A stretch of 63,635 nucleotides of DNA, counting the filler, from Platydemus manokwari (Eukaryota), in the NCBI GenBank assembly GCA_037951405.1. It is 6 parts of 6 records of this genome, joined end to end, with 100 filler letters (N's around TTAATTAATTAA, not from the genome) between each part and the next. Parts side by side here need not be neighbours in the genome. Positions count along the whole stretch, not along the records: positions 32,037 to 42,255 come from JBBMOY011157216.1; 5 more parts are not named here. The stretch is one strand, 5' to 3'. The translations under genes and the position numbers were made by a program. Positions 27,561-41,000 of the stretch are shown here, piece after piece; the stretch's first letter is position 1, and each line of letters opens with the position of its first letter. The notes beneath the pieces were generated by a model. The model was not told the DNA's origin and searched no databases. It saw only the letters and a program-made list of their open reading frames with translations.

Positions 27561-28469
27561 TATTCAAACAAATAAAATCTCATTTAAACAAATAATTAGT
27601 CGATATAATCAGTTAGAAACTATTTGATATTGATTTTGTAATATTACCAGCTAATTTATGGGGAAATTATCAATATCAAAATGAGAATTATCATGGAAAC
27701 AAATGAAAATCGTCAAGAACAAACATTAATTGAGCACCTTTCATTGATATAATCGGGTAACGTGTAAGTATCTGGAACCATTTGCGTCAATAAGCCTTTT
27801 GAACCTAATGATTGGTGTTAATATGAAACAAATTAGAAATTAATCCATAAGTTATTACTATAATGTTTCAAAATAAAAGACGAATCCTCGATGCATGTTT
27901 TACAACAATTCTCTACCTACAAGACATAAATATGAAAACAAACATTGATTAATATTATTTCTGGGTTAATAATCGATATTTTTGTTTTAATTGATGTATT
28001 TTTCATATAAAAATGATTTGAGATTAGATAATAACTGATATAAAATATCCTTCAAATGACAGCCATGAGGATGACAGAGCTGGTAATTCTGGGGAAATAT
28101 TTATTTTCAAATCGATATTTTAACTTTAAAGTGAGCTCTAAACCAAAAATTGTGCTTGAACAATCACGGTTGAGAAAACCAGAGCAAAATAGATTGGGAT
28201 TAGATTAGTCGGGATGAACCGATTAGATTTATTCGAAACCTCCGCTATCGGGCGGATAAATAAATGGTAACAAAGTCATTGTTTTTCAGAGTAGAACATT
28301 GGGTAAAGAAACAAAAATTAAACATTTCTCATTTAAAATATTGCGCTTTGAGGGTGGTCATTAGAAACCAAATAATAGTGTAGAAAAACAAATGCATAAA
28401 TACTTCATTTTTATATAATAGAAGGTTTGATCACGAAAAATTAGCAACGAATTTCAAATATCCTCAAAA

Positions 28470-29062: not shown

Positions 29063-30149
29063 CTATTGGTATTAATAAATACATTAATGATTAATTAAAC
29101 CAATGATTAAATATACTTTGACTTAATTTTAATTTATAAAAATTATTCATATTTATAATAAAAACTGAATTGGTTTTATACTTTTAAATTAATTACTTAT
29201 CATGCATACACAATAACTATTATTATACTGAAATTTGTGAATATTTCTTAAATCTCGTTAAATCGTAATAGATTATTTAAACAAACTGTTTAATAAATAA
29301 TTATAAAAATATTATGACTATGATTTTCATTAGATATCATTTCAAAGACTGGGATTTCAAAAACAGGGATTAATAAATATTTAGAACTCAAAATAAAAAT
29401 TTATCAAATTTAATGAAATGAAGAACATCTAAGAATTATTTTTAGTGAAGTTTTAAACTAACTTTAAAACTTCTACAAATTTACTATATATCATAATTAT
29501 TATAACCGGACCAAGTAAATTGAGGATAATTTGATTAAACTGCACTTATGCAAAGCATACACATCTATTGTTTTTAAAATGAAATTAATATAAGAAAATA
29601 TGATAGAAAAATATGAATATTTAAAAATTCTTCATGGAAATCGAAAAACATTGTTTAAGTTATTTTGATGAACTCAAAAAATATACAACAATCAATAGTT
29701 AATTCAAAGTAAATAGTAAAATTAATTTACTAAATCTATGTTAATGGGATTTGGAATAATGGGGAACGTTTATAGGAACTAAAGTTTATTTAAATGAGCC
29801 GAGAATGCATTGAAGATTCTTTCTGCCAATTTTAGAAGCTATGTTTTCAAATTTTGATTGTTTTGTTTTTTGAGTTTGAAGATTTGTAGGACATGGCACG
29901 AAATCTTACATGAAAGAGAGGTTGTAAATTGCCACTAAATCTTGAATGAATGCATTAGTCAGTAGGGTTTTAGTTCCGATCCTCACTTATATTACATGCA
30001 TCGCTAGCGTACACCAAATTTGAAACTTTATGAGTATTTGAGAAGTTTTCTAAAGAACAATAGAAACAATGTACTCCTAAGTGGCAAAAAATATGAAAAA
30101 CAATGCGCAGGCTCAGTTTTAGGCTGGTAGTTTATTAATGTCAATGATA

Positions 30150-32482: not shown

Positions 32483-35400
32483 TTAGTTACTGGGATTCTC
32501 ATTGCGTTTGAGCATATTTCGAGGATGCTCCTTTAGTGCATTGTACATGAATTGTACGTAAGTGTACACACATTTCTCATCGGGTGAGTCCAGTACAAGC
32601 ATGTCTTCCGGGTCCAGCAGAGGTTCTATGCCACCATACTTCCTTAACAAACTTATGTTTATCCAGCAAATATTAACAAAGCGTAACTTCGCAGTTTCAA
32701 AGGCTAATTTTAAATTCCTGAGTGGATTTTTCGATGAAAGAGAATTGTAATCGAAGGAATTTGGATAAAAGTGATGAATCAGTGCACAGAAAGCCAGACC
32801 ATCAGCCCAAGATTTCGAATAATTTGTTATTTGGATATTCTGAATGATAACAATTATTTCAAATTTTCGTATTTTTTGCGTTAATATGCATTAAAAAGTG
32901 CTCTAAATGGAAGCAATGCTGAACTCATAGCAGCTAATAGCAGTCTACTCTCTACTTGGTACTCGATGGTATTTTTCTGAAGCCATAAGAGTAATTTGTC
33001 TCTCAATGAGCCTTTTGACTGGTAACCAATAATATGTGCACTTCCTTTTCGAGTAAGAGAAGACCCCTGTCTGCAAATTGACATAGTTGTGGATAACTCG
33101 AGTACAGAATTACAATGTTTATATATAAATATAAATATAAATATATATTTGTAGCAGCATTAATGAGTTGTGCTTGATTCAAGAACTTTAGTAGATTGTG
33201 CAAAAATATTTATAAAAATAATAATAAGAATAATAATAATAATCATATTATCCAATAACAGCATATACAAGGTGATGTGCTCTATTTACAAATTATGTTT
33301 TTGACGAGACCTCATATTCTTTAGTGTTTTCTTGACAGAATTCAATAATATGTGCCTTTATTGCCTGCACTGATGAACGGGCAGTCTGTGCCCTCCTCTT
33401 CATTTGGGGAATCACCTTCATAACACTCCTGAAGACATAGTTAGACAACCACAAAGATTGAAGTGAATAGAGTAAAATATAACAGAAAAAACAAATTAAA
33501 CTTGCTGCAGTTTACATAGAGCCTGAATCTTGAAAATCATCCCGAATTATTATTTTTATTAATATTCATTATTATAACTAATTTTGTTGCTATTATTTAT
33601 TACAACAAACTATATAACAGGAACAATAAAATTAAAATTTTCTAGTTCTTAACATAATCTATTATACATTTTTTACTATTGGAATAGAATTTTCTCAACT
33701 TGCTTCTTATGTTGGGTACAGACCCCACTCCAAAAACGATAATGATAATAATAATTTAATTTTTTTTTCATTATGTTCAAGATTTTTCCAATATTTTTCA
33801 TGGTTTATACTAAATACAACTAAGAAATGATCTATAAATTACAGCATAGATTGATCCATAAATTTTTTGGGTGTAACTTTAATCCCAATCATTAGTAAGG
33901 CTTTCAATGGGATACATGGCTTTTACGGGCAAAAGCAAGAAGGAATCATCGTTATTTAATAATACAAAGCAATACAATTTGAAATAATCAATCAATTTAT
34001 TAATTAAATAACGACTTGTTTATTTATTCAATATTGCATTTTATTGTATTCTATTTCGATCTCATATTTCATTATTTCATTGAAATATTCTTTATTTAAT
34101 TATATTTTAAAGTGTTATAATTACTGGAGTAACCACATCTATTGGATCTAGGTTTTAATAATATAAAGTAGTATTTTATACTTGAAATCTGATCACCGAT
34201 AAACTCTTATTGTGACAAGTCATTGATTAATATAGAGCTTCTTTAGATTTTTAAATCTATCGTAAAATAATAAGCCAATCAAAGTATGGCATAGTTCAAC
34301 ATTATTGATTTTCATTTTACAATGTAGTGAATATTTAAATTCGCATTCATTTAATTTTATCATTGATTAATAATCAATAATAGTGCCTTTCGGGTGAACT
34401 TATAAAAATTACAATAATGAAATATATTTTAATGTTTATATTTCAACTATAATATGGATAAATAAACTTACGTCGCACTAATTTTACGAGTTCGCGCTCC
34501 CGACGCTGTTGTAGTATTTTCACCAGAATTGATTTCTGATAAATTGACAAATTAAGTAGATAATATATTTTCGAAATGTTTTCATGTCATTTTAACCATA
34601 TATAAAAGTAAATAAAATCAAATGTCGCACTTATCCGTAGAAATTGGGAGTTTAGTAACAGATGTGAAAATCGTGCAAAACCAATAATCAATCAGGAATA
34701 AAGATTAAAATAACGAACTTGAAAATAAACAGTGAAGTGTTGGATAAGGGCACTCGCTCTAATTCTTTGACGAATAAAAATGTAAAATCAAATTCGACGC
34801 ATGAAAATTACAAGCAAAAAAAGGATTTCAATCACTGAGAAATTCCACGAACGTGATTCTTATCAGAATCAAATATCGTAATCAACTATAAAGGTGATAT
34901 TTGAGAAAAATAGTCTTTGACCAAATACTAATCAAGTATAATCTCGAGTTCTTGTCTAAAACGCATTCTCTCGATACTCATATCTTCTTGCTTGGAATAG
35001 GTGGGATACATTTAGAGCAATTGCTGAGATTTTATTTGTTAATTCTTCAAGGGACAAGCCTTACGCTTAATATCCACGTATTGTTTCCATTAACTTTAAA
35101 CAAGACTTCAAAATATCCTTTGGAATAATTTTTATTTGATGGGTCGAATATGCTATGGGTCGAAATATTTACATTAAAACCCACACTTCTGAGTCGCACA
35201 TGACTCCTGGACATAAACTAATAAAAGAATGTCAAAACATAAATATAGATGACTGGATATAACTGGATAACAAATAATTTAATCGCGTACCTCGTCTAGG
35301 ATTTGATTTTGTCAGATTCATTTTTAGCGACGAATTTATTAGATCATTTATTTCTTGGTCAGTCAAAGCTTTGACTTTCTGGGATTTTTTGGAATCGCCT

Positions 35401-36690
35401 GAATATTTTTCCAAGCAGTTAATTTAGATAAAACGATAAAAACTCACCAATATTAGTCGGTTTCTCAAATACTTGTCTCGCACTAGCAACTCTAGAAAGA
35501 TTGGTTTTCACAGGTGTTTTCGGCGAACTAGAGATTGAATTCTTGGGAATCGGTATCAAACTGGATTCATTTATGTAAAAGCTATTTCGAGTCTTCTCAT
35601 TAGGTTTGTCGACATCTGTTTCGATTCTTGTGTCTGAAAAACATTATGTTTATAAAGATAAAATATTAACCTTGCGCTAATCTTTGATTGATAACAACCG
35701 ATGCAGGCCTTTCAACATAGGCCTGGCGATCGGGTTTCAAAGGAATTGATGACCTCATTTCAAAAGACTTTTTTTCAGGTTTTGTTGGTGTTATAGGTGT
35801 CTTAACGTTGGATTTTACTGAAGGAACATTATTCTGATTAATTTCGCTTGTTGGCAGTAACGATTTTTCCTTATTGCTGTCTTGTTGCGTTGGACTTTGA
35901 TAAGTTCTCGTATAGGATTTAGTAACAGGAGCACTATTTTGATTGGTCTTCGAGTCATTCCATAAGGAATTTAGCATTTGTTTTGTAAAATCGGCATCAG
36001 TATTAGATGTTCTGATTTCATCTTTCTAAGCATTTATTTAAAATAAAGTAAGATCCAGTTTTACCTTAGTAACATTGACTTTATTGCTAGGGGTTATCGA
36101 ATTGACTTTTGTTGCCGACGAGTTAATATTGGATTTTTCTACGTTTTCCTCCAGATTTGAGTTCTCTTCTCTGATCAACTGAGTATCACAAATTGATTGA
36201 CTAAAAGAAATGGGTAATTTTATCATTCAATATCCACCAAATACCCTTTCAAACAGTTACACTTCTCTTCCAGTTCTAGGATGTCTTTTCTAAGCTGTCT
36301 ACGACTTGCAAGATCAACGGTCTCATCTAGCTGTGAGAAAATCAGCTATTTTTTGGAAATATACTTTAGCAAATCAAACTTCTTTCTTTAACAGGCAAAT
36401 TTTCTGCATGCATTGTTCTTGTTCGGTTCCAGAATTCGATTGTTTGAGAGAATTCTTATCTTTGGTAGAATTTGAAGATGAACTAACGGAGTCTCCTTTT
36501 TTCATCTAAATAAAGATTAAAAAATCCCATCTCCGGAGAAACACTAGGTGAATCATACGATTTTTACGTCTTCAGATGTGATTTGATTGCAGGAATCCAA
36601 CGTTTTGGGATTGTCTGAATTATAATTTGATTTATTACGCATTGCTTTCCTGAGCAGTCGCCGTCTAGTGATTGAAGACTCTTGGATTAG
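32483..36690 (-). CDS. SMTN: Smoothelin-like protein (multi-exon; smoothelin repeats plus C-terminal calponin-homology domain); 5' end unresolved
   Basis: GT-AG exons include 36559-36690 (LIQESSITRRRLLRKAMR), an exon near 36245-36330 (LDETVDLASRRQLRKDILEL), Ser/Thr/Pro-rich exons at 35291-36200, 34472-34535, alternative exons 33311-33428 or 32956-33070, then 32688-32839 (NIQITNYSKSWADGLAFCALIHHFYPNSFDY) and 32483-32642 (GIEPLLDPEDML..PDEKCVYTYVQFMY...stop). Phases are compatible across the 3' exons. Confidence 0.85.
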
Positions 36691-37579
36691 CTATAATAGA
36701 TAATTATCTTTAATACAGTGAACATAATGTTATTAAACTATAATGATGGAAACGTGTAATGGCTTTGTTGAGTTAACTATTAGTAGCAAACTCAACAGTA
36801 GCCTTCTGTTACCATTAGCAATGTTATGTTTAATGTTCATAGTTTGTGATTGTTATATATATTTAATTAATCGCATCGCTACATTGTTTAATGAAAATTC
36901 ATTGTATTTGCGTTCATTGGATATTTTTTATTACATCATCTGTTTGTTCGGGTTCTATTTCTCGCATAGATTCAACAATTTTTAAAAGACATAACTGCAT
37001 ATCTATATCTTACAGATTTAATTTATTACAAAAAGTCAAACCTCAAACATCTATCATTCCTAGAATCTTCTTATAGAAGAATACATTTTACACTATCGAG
37101 TTGATAGTCTAAATACCCTTTATCGAATATGCCTCTACTTTTGTTGCGGATACACCAAAAAAATCTCGATAATAACAGATAATCTAATAACCATAATCTA
37201 GTATCAATCTCAATAATCACGAGATCTTTCGAAAAGCCTCATCAATAAATCAGATCAAAATAAATAATCGAAGAGCATTTTGTTATAAACGATGATATTT
37301 CCCAAGATAACCGAACATAATAATTAATTCTGTGCAAGGAAACACTAAATATTTTGTGATAATATTTTATGTTATAATGTGAGGATATATTTTCATGAAT
37401 GATGGCATTTAAATTATGTTGCGGTGATGTTAAATAGGAATACAATGCATTGTTGGGTTTCACAATAAGTTTCGATTTGGTATAAGATGGATCAGAATAT
37501 ATTGAAGATGTATGATAATCGGTTTATTTCATATTCTAGATCATTAAGTATGTCAAACCCTAAATTGTTTTTATGAGCA

Positions 37580-38010: not shown

Positions 38011-41000
38011 GTAAATGGTAAGTTAATTTTAATGTTATCAATTTATTTTGAAAAATTAATTTACCAAAAATAAAAATAAAGATCACCTGCTGCTACAGAT
38101 ACAATGAATTATTTTAAATAAAATTTCCGTATTAAGCAATTGAAAGTCGAATACAATGATTTGTTCTTGCTGTATTGAGTAATAAACGATTATCATGAGA
38201 TAACAATGGTTCATTTATCAAGATAATTCTTCAATGGATACGTAACAAGAATAATATTTCTATTTCAGATTTCTTAAGTCTTCGTAACTGATGAATTTGT
38301 AAGAAGCTAATGAGGCCCGTAAAATTTGATGTTTATTTAAATCAGGGCTTTGTTTTTGTAAAGGGCAATTTTATTTTGGCCTGGTCTTATAATACTATTT
38401 TCCAATTCGTAAATTTTTGTTTTATGCTAATATTCTATTATTGGGATTTACTAATACTATTTTTATTCCATTATTTTTAAGGTTACTATATTTAGTAACG
38501 AATTTATTTTATTTCTATTAGGTAGGATAATTTCTATTTTTATTTTTGGACAAAATAATATATTTTATTTAGGATAAGTCAGTCTGAAAATTGGAAAAAA
38601 AATGTATTTGTCTTCATTATCATAATTTATTATAGGGTTGTATCCAAAAGTACTTTATAAGAAAAAGTTTTATCATAGAAGATAGAAAGAAAATATTAAT
38701 ATAAGATCAAAATCTATATAATATATACCTTGGTGAATCGAAACGAGCAAAAATGTGACTTAATAATAATAAATACCAAATGAATAAAGATAAAATATGG
38801 CACCAAGCACATTTAAAGACACAAATAAAAGCAAGTGTATTTACATAGCAAAAATCTCAAGGATAAAAACAGCAAAACACAAAAAGCTATTGCAGATAGA
38901 GGGTTGACAAGAACAAGGCGACAAATAATGTAAATTAGCTTAAAATCATCACATTGGCCATTGTTATATTGGTAAACAAACGATCACAAAATCTTGCGAT
39001 TTAAGTAGAAATCATCCGCCAAAGCCTGATATTTCCCTCTATATATAAATAATTATTCCTACAATAGTCCACATACTACTGCAGAAGCACTTTGCAGGAA
39101 CAACAAAAAGTCCGTGTCGAGTGAAATAATATATTAACACGAATAATAATACATCATTTGGTATAGCGAGCCGAGACACACAAAATTTCCAATTCAACAA
39201 TAAATATAAAACCATCAAATAATCCAATACTTTTACTACTGCACCACAGGTGATTCCAACGTGATGAATTGTTGTCCTTTATTATAAAGAACAAAATGAT
39301 TTATCTCAAATACAATTCCGATGATATCTCTTATTTAAATTTTATAATGGGAAAGATCAATGCTTTATTTACACTTTTATATTAATTTTTGGTAGAGATT
39401 TCTGGCATGTGTGTTGCACCAAAATTGATGTAATTATTATTTTCTATTTTTAAATTAATGTTCCTTTAATTGACTTAAAAATTATCTCTTGTAATAAAAA
39501 ATTAATCATTTCTATTCAACATCTTCTTTACTTTTGCGTCATTTCGATGGCAAACTTTAATTTATATTCTATTATTGACCAATGGGATTAAGGGGATATT
39601 TATTTTTTCTTTCTAAACTAGTTATCTACTTTTAATTATTTCGATTTCATTTGTTATGAACCCACATGGTCTATGATCAAGATGATTTTACTTTTATCTA
39701 CAAAAGCTTGATTTCTTGACAAATTGCACTTTAGAAAGATAAGAGCTGTATGATGATGAGATGGGAATTCTGTGAGAATATAAAAGTTGAACAAATGAGA
39801 AAGAATTTGTTATGATGTTCATGAAAATTTGAAATTATATTTGATCAAGTATCGAGGATTACCAATTGGTAAAATAAAAGTTTGAGGTTTTTATATTTCA
39901 TCTATCGAACTTTATTAGCTTGCCTTTCGTAGATGTGATTCAGTAAGGATGGTTGGTAGGTTGGAATAGTAAATAATTTGTAATTCTAATGGCCTGTATC
40001 ACTCATTATTGTTGCTAACGATTATGTGATTTGCTAAACGGTTGATGTCATGTTGGATTCGAAAATTATATATTCATGGTTTTCCAGATTGCGATGATTG
40101 TGATGATTGTGATGATTGCGATGCGATAGTTCATAAATTTATTTCACATCATAATTTATTAGCTTTCGTCACATAGGGGGTCTCATAGATTTTTTATCAA
40201 CTCTCAAACAAAATGTTGCAGACAACATCATTTAAACAACAGGAAGCAATAACAACAAGAACCAAAAAAATATTGATAATAAGCTCTTGTCGAGATAGAA
40301 TTACCTCTGATTTTATTAATTTATTGTTGCTATTATATACGATAATGTAATTGTTTATGATGACCAGCAAGGAAAATATATTGCTATTATTATTATTATT
40401 ATCATCATCATTATATTATTATATAAAATATTATTATCGTGATTAATCTTGATTATAACGATTAGATTTGAATTCATTTACCGCTGGGCAGTGCATATCA
40501 TGGTTTTTTTTTCTGAAAGATGCCATTTAGCCCTCCCAGTTATTATTGTTGATATTTTTAATCCAATTTTAAGAATCCAGAATTCTTAGTTATAAATTAT
40601 CCCACTTAGTGTTAAGCTATACTTTCATATATCTGAAATAATATTTCATATAAAGATATTTCCACACAATTGAAAATCTTCTACCGGAAATAATTCTACC
40701 AGATGAGAATAGAGAGAGCTTACAGACAAAGAATTTGAAAATGAATGACTTTACTTAGTCACTTGGTATTGCTATGAAATCTATGTTCTTCCCACGATTT
40801 TTACTTCTCGTAAAGATTGATTTTACAATTTATAATATGTTTCATGCAGCCATAAATTGACACCAGACTCTAATCCTAGAGACATCCAATCATATATATT
40901 TATAAACTTTATCACAAAATTCATTAAAGAACATTCCCTACGGTAATAATAAATCAGATTTTCCCAAAATACTTCAAAAATAAATCAAAATTCAGCAAAA

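What the first reader, a model, noticed from the sequence alone, without database searches (positions are those of the whole stretch)
32956..33428. Frame-enforced mutually exclusive exons swap the first helix of the smoothelin CH domain
Seen: exon A 33311-33428 (118 nt; SVMKVIPQMKRRAQTARSSVQAIKAHIIEFCQENTKEYE) and exon B 32956-33070 (115 nt; QGSSLTRKGSAHIIGYQSKGSLRDKLLLWLQKNTIEYQ). Both have cag acceptors and GT donors, are 3n+1 long, complete the same split Thr codon from exon 34472-34535, and end at the homologous EY(E/Q) position. Including both or neither shifts the frame. A has FC and B has WL where the family has WC. Known: this helix contributes to CH-domain ligand binding, and an adjacent basic segment binds calmodulin in SMTNL1. 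Inference: an old exon duplication producing two functionally distinct isoforms, probably unannotated.
Basis: partly seen in the sequence, partly recalled or inferred. Interest (0 to 1): 0.75.

Follow-up and report, generated by a model that had tools for sequence, protein, structure and literature searches.

The report
Alternative first-helix exons in smoothelin gene
A muscle-cytoskeleton gene (smoothelin-like) carries two side-by-side versions of the exon for the first helix of its actin-binding-type CH domain, of which only one can be spliced in at a time; the same swap exists in priapulid, brachiopod and mollusc genes, so it is an old but apparently undescribed isoform switch.

Summary
On the minus strand, two AG/GT-bounded exons lie between a phase-2 upstream exon and the CH-core exon: A (33428-33311, 118 nt) and B (33070-32956, 115 nt). 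Including both or neither frameshifts into an early stop. The gene is smoothelin-type: its best solved relatives are the smoothelin and SMTNL1 CH domains. Its exon sizes (118/115 + 152 nt) equal those published for vertebrate SMTN genes.

NCBI isoform models of Priapulus, Lingula and Liolophura swap exactly this segment between a Trp-type helix and a Phe/Tyr-type helix. In the Priapulus locus the Tyr-type exon comes first, the Trp-type second, and both are 3n+1, as here.

Exon A is a clear Phe-type orthologue: 36 bits against a Phe-type profile, and a 98/97 clade across phyla.

Exon B sits where the Trp-type exon should be but is very diverged and insignificant against either profile. It keeps the buried helix positions, exon-like GC and an open frame.

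No transcripts or close relatives were available, so use of B is inferred (about 0.7). No paper on this swap was found. Verdict: a real, ancient mutually exclusive exon pair, and a new member of a known kind.

The parts
34472..34535 (-). Upstream constitutive exon (64 nt). It encodes ..INSGENTTTASGARTRKISA and ends with AC, the first two bases of a split Thr codon (phase 2). Donor is GAC|gtaagt.
   Evidence: Sequence reading; frame; splice sites. The phase-2 end matches the Priapulus upstream exon (..KPM + AG).
33311..33428 (-). Exon A, 118 nt, the Phe-type version of CH helix I (..RSSVQAIKAHIIEFCQENTKEYE). Weak donor GAG|gtctcg.
   Evidence: Phe-type profile built without window sequences: 36.2 bits, E 1.1e-9 among 6779 six-frame fragments; Trp-type profile only 6.6 bits. 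48-50% identity over 29-30 aa to the Liolophura and Elysia Phe-type exons. Inside a 98/97 clade with Phe/Tyr-type exons of Lingula, Priapulus, Elysia and Liolophura. GC 0.415 against 0.24 in the flanking introns.
32956..33070 (-). Exon B, 115 nt, a diverged second version of helix I (..SLRDKLLLWLQKNTIEYQ). It sits where the Trp-type exon lies in Priapulus. Donor CAA|gtagag.
   Evidence: AG/GT bounded, 3n+1, and ends at the family's EY(x)| junction. Keeps L-3, L-2, W0, T+5 and Y+8, with conservative L-7 and R-6, out of the 8 most conserved helix columns. Only 5.5 bits (E 4.3) against the Phe-type profile and below listing against the Trp-type profile; exceeds its own shuffles (1/2000 and 3/2000). 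GC 0.391, reached by 0.5% of 608 non-coding windows.
32688..32839 (-). 152-nt CH core exon (helices II-IV: NIQITNYSKSWADGLAFCALIHHFYPNSFDY...AFETA plus 2 nt).
   Evidence: Pfam CH 7.9e-15. Best solved relatives are human smoothelin 2d87 (1.8e-23) and SMTNL1 2jv9. Same 152-nt size as the invariant penultimate exon of vertebrate SMTN/SMTNL1/2 (PMC10643981) and as in Trichinella, Helobdella and Macrostomum.
32643..32687 (-). 45-nt intron (gttacg...ttaag), which happens to be open in frame.
   Evidence: A 15-residue gap at exactly this place in the alignments to 2d87 and 2jv9; GT..AG ends read.
32483..32642 (-). Terminal coding exon (KYGGIEPLLDPEDMLVLDSPDEKCVYTYVQFMYNALKEHP...), stop TAA at 32485-32483.
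33343..33355 (-). 13-nt string GCACATATTATTG (sense), shared exactly with exon B at 33027-33039. It is out of register: in A it encodes helix residues AHII, in B it lies 14 residues upstream of the helix.
   Evidence: family D8. Never reached in 5000 codon shuffles. Unexplained; a short conversion tract is possible.

Best explanation
The piece holds the 3' half of a smoothelin-family gene on the minus strand. Its exon for helix I of the C-terminal CH domain exists in two tandem copies, A and B.

This exon is 3n+1 long in every lineage looked at: 118/115 nt in vertebrates; 94, 106 and 121 nt in Trichinella, Helobdella and Macrostomum; 88 and 103 nt in Priapulus. It sits between a phase-2 and a phase-0 intron. 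Any tandem duplicate is therefore automatically mutually exclusive: only mRNAs with exactly one copy keep the CH domain in frame. The double-inclusion and double-skip products run into early stops, and would be truncated or degraded.

The pair is not a local novelty. It corresponds to a Phe/Tyr-type against Trp-type helix-I exon pair that is spliced alternatively in priapulids, brachiopods and molluscs. Exon A is the Phe-type orthologue. Exon B occupies the Trp-type slot but has diverged strongly on its surface positions while keeping the buried ones.

The two mRNAs would give proteins with the same CH core (helices II-VI). They would differ in helix I and in the roughly 20 residues before it, the neighbourhood where SMTNL1 has its regulatory Ser301, calmodulin-binding segment and tropomyosin surface. 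That would tune partner binding or regulation per cell type.

Shown: the anatomy, the frame logic, the family, the cross-phylum swap and the orthology of A. Inferred: that B is used, that nonsense-mediated decay removes the wrong products, and any functional difference.
For: - Anatomy and frames.
- Smoothelin-type CH domain.
- Family consensus and conserved junction EY(E)|N(V)xITNF.
- Priapulus isoform X2 against X1/3/4/5 swap exactly this segment. The Priapulus locus L001 has the Tyr-type exon at 28045-28132 (88 nt), then the Trp-type exon at 29168-29270 (103 nt), with phase 2 before and phase 0 after.
- Lingula X1 (Trp-type) against X3/X5 (Phe-type), and Liolophura X2 (Phe-type) against X3/4/5 (Trp-type).
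- Exon A: 36.2 bits, E 1.1e-9 on the Phe-type profile; 48-50% identity to mollusc Phe-type exons; 98/97 clade.
- Exon B: conserved core positions; better than its own shuffles; exon-like GC; 92-codon open frame in roughly 27% GC DNA.
- 13-nt exact A/B match beyond chance.
- Exon sizes 118/115/152 identical to vertebrate SMTN genes (PMC10643981); 3n+1 everywhere.
Against: - No RNA evidence of any kind was available.
- Exon B is not significantly similar to either the Phe-type or the Trp-type profile in a blind six-frame scan (E 4.3), and it sits on a very long unplaced branch.
- AU tests on 26 columns cannot reject A+B as a local duplicate pair (p 0.29), nor species-wise pairing in Priapulus or Lingula (p 0.32, 0.12). 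The ancient origin therefore rests on branch support plus shared gene structure.
- Both alternative donors are weak (gtctcg, gtagag).
- Helobdella, Trichinella, Brachionus and Macrostomum loci show only one (Trp-type) exon, so the pair is not universal.
- The Smoothelin N-terminal domain was not detected in the piece.
Confidence: 0.7

Rival explanations
1. Exon A is the only helix-I exon in use. B is a decaying relic of the former Trp-type exon (or of a duplicate of A), no longer spliced in or giving only noise transcripts.
For: B scores only 5.5 bits on the Phe-type profile and below listing on the Trp-type profile. The Trp-type exons of other phyla score 35-56 bits. B has a long branch of 2.37, a weak donor with A at -1, and residues never seen in the family at two highly conserved columns: L at -7 and L at +1.
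Against: After that much divergence, a neutral sequence in DNA with about 8% stop-like codons should have lost its frame: about 4% chance of staying open over 38 codons (my estimate from base composition). B keeps AG and GT at the right phase, the 3n+1 length, exon-like GC (0.5% tail), and five of the eight most conserved residues exactly plus two conservative changes.
Confidence: 0.2
2. B is not the orthologue of the ancient Trp-type exon. It is a lineage-specific duplicate of exon A that regained Trp. This is a difference of origin only; it would still be a mutually exclusive pair.
For: B shares Asn-Thr (QKNTIEY) with the Phe-type exons; Asn is rare (4%) at that column overall. There is a 13-nt exact DNA match between A and B and a shared AACTATGTC just upstream of both acceptors. 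The AU test does not reject A+B as sisters (p 0.29), nor B inside the Phe-type clade (p 0.46).
Against: The 13-nt match is out of register with the helix alignment, so it fits a short conversion patch better than common descent of whole exons. Exon order (Phe-type first, Trp-bearing exon second) equals that of Priapulus. The free tree puts B among Trp-type exons, though without support.
Confidence: 0.25
3. B is a chance open frame in the intron and the resemblance to helix I is accidental.
For: In a blind scan, fragments of that score are expected about 4 times in 217,000 residues. Other long open frames without known function occur in the piece.
Against: The match lies in the only 472-nt interval where a second copy could work. 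It is on the right strand and in the right frame, ends exactly at the profile's last column directly before a GT, starts after an AG that completes the same Thr codon, and is 3n+1 long. Scaling E 4.3 to the roughly 470 residues of that interval gives about 0.01 before the splice and phase requirements are added (my arithmetic). GC content and the shuffle tests also argue against chance.
Confidence: 0.03
4. Choice between A and B is made by competing RNA pairings, with a docking site just after the upstream donor and selector sites before each alternative exon, as in insect Dscam or 14-3-3 xi.
For: A 27-nt stretch at 34446-34420 has its two best partners in the whole 1.8-kb pre-mRNA stretch at 33498-33469 (upstream of A, -9.0 kcal/mol) and at 33151-33122 (upstream of B, -8.9).
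Against: The stretch was picked after seeing the repeats. All arms are A/U-only low-complexity sequence. In an unbiased test, random pairs of 120-nt windows from the same piece do as well 58% of the time. No relatives were available to test covariation.
Confidence: 0.05

Closest known systems
Vertebrate SMTN / SMTNL1 / SMTNL2 gene structure (Garg & Fisher 2023, PMC10643981)
   Same: A single C-terminal type-2 CH domain. Helix I is encoded in the 3' half of a 118- or 115-nt exon, followed by an invariant 152-nt exon for helices II-IV and a terminal exon for helices IV-VI. The window has 118 (A), 115 (B), 152 and a terminal exon.
   Different: In vertebrates the helix-I exon is single and constitutive, and the described alternative splicing (E20/E21) changes helices IV-VI. 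Here the helix-I exon is duplicated, and the terminal part shows no second version in the piece.
NCBI isoform models of smoothelin-like genes in Priapulus caudatus (LOC106817857, X1 vs X2), Lingula anatina (X1 vs X3/X5) and Liolophura sinensis (X2 vs X3-X5)
   Same: The same segment is swapped, between the same neighbouring exons, with a Trp-type and a Phe/Tyr-type helix I. In Priapulus the order, phases and 3n+1 lengths are the same. Exon A groups with their Phe/Tyr-type exons.
   Different: Their Trp-type exons are close to the family consensus (47-56 bits), whereas the window's second exon B is very diverged. Exon lengths differ (88/103 nt in Priapulus). Their isoforms are database models; I found no paper that describes them.
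Frame-enforced mutually exclusive exon pairs from tandem exon duplication in cytoskeletal genes (for example alpha-actinin NM/SM exons; PMC5062968 discusses Actn1)
   Same: Tandem homologous exons encode the same structural element, and one of the two is chosen per cell type. Where exon length is not a multiple of three, wrong combinations are out of frame.
   Different: A different gene and a different structural element (CH helix I instead of an EF hand). Tissue specificity here is unknown.
SMTNL1 regulatory region upstream of the CH domain (Ser301 PKA site, CBD1 residues 310-325, tropomyosin surface; PMC5359911)
   Same: The swapped segment includes the roughly 20 residues before helix I. 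The constitutive exon just before it ends in RTRKIS and exon B contains TRKGS, both basophilic-kinase-like motifs. The Trp-type consensus carries RS(P/A)S where most Phe-type exons have R(R/H/M)NA.
   Different: No sequence homology to CBD1 or Ser301 was tested or shown here. The link is positional and inferred.

Membership tests
Smoothelin family (SMTN/SMTNL) | Single type-2 CH domain at the extreme C-terminus | tested here: met
   Pfam CH 7.9e-15 on the core and terminal exon read-through. The stop follows 52 residues after the 45-nt intron. Best solved relatives are smoothelin 2d87 (1.8e-23) and SMTNL1 2jv9 (1.3e-19), ahead of alpha-actinin CH2.
Smoothelin family (SMTN/SMTNL) | Conserved 3' gene structure: 118/115-nt helix-I exon, then a 152-nt exon, then a terminal exon | tested here: met
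   Exons of 118, 115 and 152 nt against PMC10643981. The 152-nt exon is also present in the Trichinella, Helobdella and Macrostomum loci.
Smoothelin family (SMTN/SMTNL) | N-terminal Smoothelin domain (PF12510) | tested here: inconclusive
   No Pfam hit on eight upstream open frames at E up to 10, and no tblastn match to the N-terminal parts of 13 homologues. The 5' end of the gene may lie outside the piece or be too diverged. A DLASRRQLRKDILELEEK stretch at 36345-36226 only resembles the motif by eye.
Mutually exclusive exon (MXE) pair from tandem duplication | Adjacent exons, same strand, each with its own AG and GT, same phase class | tested here: met
   The exons are 240 nt apart, both are 3n+1, and both complete a Thr codon and end in phase 0.
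Mutually exclusive exon (MXE) pair from tandem duplication | The two exons are homologous and encode the same structural element | tested here: met
   Both align to helix I of the family ending at EY(E/Q)|. A/B local score reached in 5 of 2000 shuffles. 13-nt exact DNA match, 0 of 5000 shuffles. The homology is weak for B.
Mutually exclusive exon (MXE) pair from tandem duplication | Both-in and both-out products are non-productive | tested here: met
Mutually exclusive exon (MXE) pair from tandem duplication | Transcripts contain one or the other exon, never both | not testable with these tools
   No RNA data for this genome. Degenerate DNA pattern scans of JGI metagenome or transcriptome contigs for either peptide found nothing. 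The 1.84-billion-protein scan found no relative above 61% identity.
Mutually exclusive exon (MXE) pair from tandem duplication | Conservation of the pair in other species | tested here: met
   Priapulus (genomic and isoforms), Lingula and Liolophura (isoforms). Not found in the Helobdella, Trichinella, Brachionus or Macrostomum loci.
Docking-site/selector RNA control of MXE choice | One intronic element complementary to an element next to each alternative exon, beyond chance | tested here: not met
   Candidate pairings of -9.0 and -8.9 kcal/mol are matched by 58% of random window pairs.

The most novel reading that the evidence does not exclude
The Phe-type/Trp-type helix-I exon pair is a regulated switch of the smoothelin CH domain that dates back at least to the last common ancestor of Ecdysozoa and Spiralia and has never been described. 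It changes the surface of helix I and the presence of an RS(P/A)S phospho-motif just before it, giving muscle- or cell-type-specific partner binding. In this lineage the Trp-type copy has been remodelled into a new surface variant, with a short conversion patch from exon A.
Probability: 0.35. Interest if true: 0.65.

Novelty: new member of a known kind. Interest (0 to 1): 0.5.

Why it matters
Smoothelins are used as markers and regulators of contractile cells, yet what their single CH domain binds is still debated. So far only variation in helices IV-VI has been discussed (PMC10643981).

A second natural switch, confined to helix I and the linker before it and kept in several protostome phyla, gives a ready-made pair of natural variants. 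These can be used to ask what helix I does: binding of actin, tropomyosin, calmodulin or myosin phosphatase, or phospho-regulation.

It also shows a simple rule. Because the helix-I exon is 3n+1 in all animals examined, any tandem duplicate of it becomes mutually exclusive without extra machinery.

For annotation of this genome, it means two isoforms should be modelled, and gene predictors that take both exons will break the CH domain.

Tried and rejected

2. Docking/selector RNA pairing looked attractive but failed the unbiased control (P = 0.58).

3. A third helix-I copy was sought with tblastn and three profiles over the whole piece. None was found.

4. Taxon of the window:
- The best CH-domain relatives are only 55-65% identical and come from many protostome phyla.
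- Rfam found nothing in the piece.
- An exact look-up of a 103-aa window ORF found nothing.

5. Genomic loci for Lingula, Liolophura and Elysia could not be fetched, because only the longest product per gene is indexed. Exon order and phases are therefore confirmed genomically only in Priapulus.

6. A word-based search restricted to the Liolophura Phe-type segment found only itself, so the wider distribution of the Phe-type exon is unknown.

7. The third large protein search was not spent on the exon-B frame. The exhaustive scan had already shown that no close relative's CH frame is in the collection.

8. P0026 (457 aa, source organism not given) carries Phe but did not join the Phe-type clade. 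It was left unclassified.

All searches were exon by exon, so no structure prediction of the two isoforms was made.

10. No human contig was fetched. Human smoothelin appears only as a PDB chain in a search result.
Full report
**1. What is in the sequence**

The gene lies on the minus strand. Reading 34700-32700 and 32760-32037 gives five elements:

- Upstream exon 34535-34472: 64 nt, acceptor ..ttatcag, donor GAC|gtaagt. Its frame (..ASGARTRKISA) ends with AC.
- Exon A 33428-33311: 118 nt, ..cttcag|GAG...GAG|gtctcg.
- Exon B 33070-32956: 115 nt, ..ttgcag|ACA...CAA|gtagag.
- CH core exon 32839-32688: 152 nt.
- A 45-nt intron 32687-32643 (gttacg..ttaag), then a terminal exon 32642-32486 with stop TAA at 32485-32483.

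A completes ACG and B completes ACA, both Thr. Both exons are 3n+1.

Reading exon by exon in the shifted frames, A+B together stop after 12 codons of the core exon. Skipping both stops after 4 codons. Either stop lies more than 100 nt upstream of the last exon junction. My only addition is the 3' end of the core exon and the mini-intron behind it.

**2. What gene it is**

The core plus terminal frame hits Pfam CH (7.9e-15). Its best solved relatives are human smoothelin CH (2d87, 1.8e-23) and SMTNL1 CH (2jv9, 1.3e-19), ahead of the alpha-actinin, spectrin and utrophin CH2 domains. The 15-residue gap in those alignments marks the 45-nt intron.

An exhaustive phmmer scan of 1.84 billion cluster representatives gave 3086 hits, none above 61% identity. 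No close relative of this organism is therefore in that collection.

The family consensus before the junction is ..RSPSAIKxMLLxWCxxxTxEYE|NVxITNFSSSW. Many mispredicted proteins diverge exactly at that junction, which fits a widely conserved intron there.

Garg and Fisher (PMC10643981) describe the vertebrate SMTN, SMTNL1 and SMTNL2 genes. A constitutive 118- or 115-nt exon carries helix I in its 3' half. An invariant 152-nt exon encodes helices II-IV, and terminal exons encode helices IV-VI. The only alternative splicing they describe (E20) affects helices IV-VI.

The window has the same sizes: 118, 115 and 152 nt. The 152-nt exon is also present in the Trichinella, Helobdella and Macrostomum loci (149 nt in Priapulus). 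The helix-I exon is 3n+1 in all of them: 94, 106, 121 and 88/103 nt.

The N-terminal Smoothelin domain was not found in the piece.

**3. The same swap in other phyla**

Cluster look-ups showed that the Priapulus caudatus LOC106817857 isoforms differ in exactly this segment:

- X2: ..NPKPM|RGATIRNDVKAVKAELLDYCQSNTQEYDSD|VEITNF..
- X1/3/4/5..NPKPM|SRSITLGGSTPGVFNANTAKEQLLYWCQAKTTEYP|VEITNF..

In the genomic locus L001 the layout is as follows:

- The upstream exon ends in phase 2 (..ATG AG|gtaact).
- The Tyr-type exon is 28045-28132 (88 nt).
- The Trp-type exon is 29168-29270 (103 nt).
- The core exon starts at 29453 in phase 0.

Order, phases and the 3n+1 class are the same as in the window.

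A word search with a Lingula isoform and inspection of the hits added two more cases. Lingula X1 is Trp-type (RSPSAIKQMLLSWTQAMTKEYANY), while X3/X5 are Phe-type (NANTIKQQILNFAQANTQEYKNY). Liolophura X3/4/5 are Trp-type (RNPSAIKQMLLDWCKAMTAEYE), while X2 is Phe-type (RRNAVQIKAEILDFCKSNTAEYK). Elysia and one metagenomic protein also carry Phe-type helices.

The helix-I swap is therefore annotated in a priapulid, a brachiopod and a chiton. Loci of Helobdella, Trichinella, Brachionus and Macrostomum contain only a Trp-type exon, and Brachionus lacks the intron at the junction.

**4. Assigning A and B**

A profile was built from six Phe/Tyr-bearing helix-I peptides (Lingula, Liolophura, Elysia, Priapulus, one JGI metagenomic protein, and P0026, which the later tree did not place with the other five). 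None of them comes from the window. It scores exon A at 36.2 bits (E 1.1e-9 among 6779 six-frame fragments). The Trp-type profile gives A only 6.6 bits.

tblastn aligns A to the mollusc Phe-type exons over 29-30 residues at 48-50% identity, including the basic stretch before the helix (KRRAQT against KKAATT). In a maximum-likelihood tree of 31 helix peptides, A falls in a clade with the Lingula, Priapulus, Elysia, Liolophura and JGI Phe/Tyr-type exons (support 98/97). That clade is apart from the Trp-type exons of the same species.

AU tests on 26 columns are weak and reject nothing: A+B as sisters p 0.29, Priapulus pair p 0.32, Lingula pair p 0.12.

Exon B is different. It scores 5.5 bits (E 4.3) on the Phe-type profile and is unlisted on the Trp-type profile. 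It sits on an unplaced long branch. It still beats its own shuffles (1/2000 and 3/2000).

Of the eight most conserved helix columns, B keeps L-3, L-2, W0, T+5 and Y+8. It has conservative L at -7 and R at -6, and one odd residue (L for C at +1). Its GC content (0.391) is that of the exons (0.34-0.45), not of the flanking introns (0.24, 0.24, 0.32). Only 0.5% of 608 non-coding windows reach it.

The match lies in the only interval, strand and frame where it could function, and ends at the profile's last column right before a GT. I therefore reject chance. I rate B as a functional, fast-evolving second exon at about 0.7, and as a relic no longer used at about 0.2.

Whether B descends from the old Trp-type exon or from a local copy of A is open. 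It shares Asn-Thr with the Phe-type exons. It also shares a 13-nt exact string with A, never reached in 5000 codon shuffles. That string is out of register with the helix alignment, which looks more like a short conversion patch.

**5. How it most likely works**

Because the ancestral helix-I exon is 3n+1 between a phase-2 and a phase-0 intron, a tandem copy is exclusive by frame alone. This is shown by the sequence here and in Priapulus. Removal of the wrong products by nonsense-mediated decay is inferred.

Both alternative donors are weak (gtctcg, gtagag), against gtaagt on the constitutive upstream exon. That is usual for regulated exons.

I tested a docking/selector model. A stretch just after the upstream donor pairs best with sites upstream of A and of B. 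However, the arms are A/U-only, and an unbiased control gives P = 0.58. The model is not supported.

The products would share helices II-VI and differ in helix I and the roughly 20 residues before it. Across the family, the Trp-type exon carries RS(P/A)S before the helix, where most Phe-type exons have R(R/H/M)NA. In the window, the constitutive exon ends in RTRKIS, exon B adds TRKGS, and exon A has a basic KRRAQTARSS stretch.

In SMTNL1, Ser301, the Ca-calmodulin site (residues 310-325) and part of the tropomyosin surface lie just upstream of, and on, the CH domain (PMC5359911). A difference in partner binding or phospho-control is thus a reasonable inference, but an untested one.

**6. Novelty**

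Searches of the held literature found no description of a helix-I exon swap:

- smoothelin with 'mutually exclusive'
- 'mutually exclusive exons' with 'calponin homology'
- smoothelin with invertebrate
- smoothelin with flatworm terms
- CG34417

The only gene-structure paper treats the helix-I exon as constitutive.

The isoforms are, however, present as NCBI models in other phyla, and tandem mutually exclusive exons in cytoskeletal genes are a well-known kind. I file this as a new member of a known kind, of moderate interest.

**7. Limits**

- No transcript data, no close relatives, and the taxon was not determined.
- Genomic confirmation outside the window comes only from Priapulus, because the other look-ups failed.
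All work was exon by exon.
- No human contig was fetched.

Noticed in passing
window 33343-33355 and 33027-33039: Exact 13-nt string (sense GCACATATTATTG) shared by exons A and B. It encodes AHII in both, but in A inside helix I and in B 14 residues upstream of the helix. It was not reached in 5000 codon shuffles. A short gene-conversion patch or the trace of a more complex duplication are possible.
   Followed up: partly
window 33434-33442 and 33080-33088: The same 9-mer AACTATGTC lies 6 to 10 nt upstream of both alternative acceptors. In A it is part of gtCTAACtatg, a branch-point-like CTAAC. It is not significant on its own (E 0.43), but its position is consistent with duplication of the intron end together with the exon.
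   Followed up: no
window 32643-32687: A 45-nt intron inside the CH domain that happens to be open in frame, so six-frame reading gives one 135-codon frame (32890-32486) with a 15-residue false insert. A prokaryote-style gene caller would read straight through it.
   Followed up: yes
window 34472-34491 and 33041-33058: The constitutive exon ends in ARTRKISA(T) and exon B begins ..SLTRKGSA. These are two similar basophilic-kinase-type motifs (R-K-x-S), so the B isoform would carry two in tandem.
   Followed up: no
window 36226-36345 and 36556-36690: Open frames with DLASRRQLRKDILELEEK and SSITRRRLLRKAMRNK resemble by eye the (D/E)xxxRRxIRxxLxE core of the Smoothelin N-terminal domain seen in homologues (for example Priapulus DFETRRVIRSRLQEVKRK). 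They get no Pfam or tblastn support.
   Followed up: partly
window 37245-37523 and 39042-39278: Two further long open frames on the minus strand (93 and 79 codons) in very AT-rich sequence, with no Pfam match at E up to 10. They could be upstream exons, transposon remains or chance.
   Followed up: partly
L005 (Macrostomum lignano NIVC01000845.1), L003 (Helobdella), L002 (Trichinella sp. T6): These smoothelin-like loci keep the 152-nt core exon and a single 3n+1 helix-I exon (121, 106 and 94 nt). No Phe-type copy is detectable, so the pair was either lost several times or is absent from these paralogues.
   Followed up: partly
P0026 (457 aa, source organism not given): It carries IILMFCKLNTEEYE, a helix whose C-terminal half matches the Phe-type signature, while its N-terminal half (RSATSAKD) looks like copepod-style Trp-type exons. 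The tree did not place it with the Phe-type clade. It is also fused to an Ig-like region upstream.
   Followed up: no
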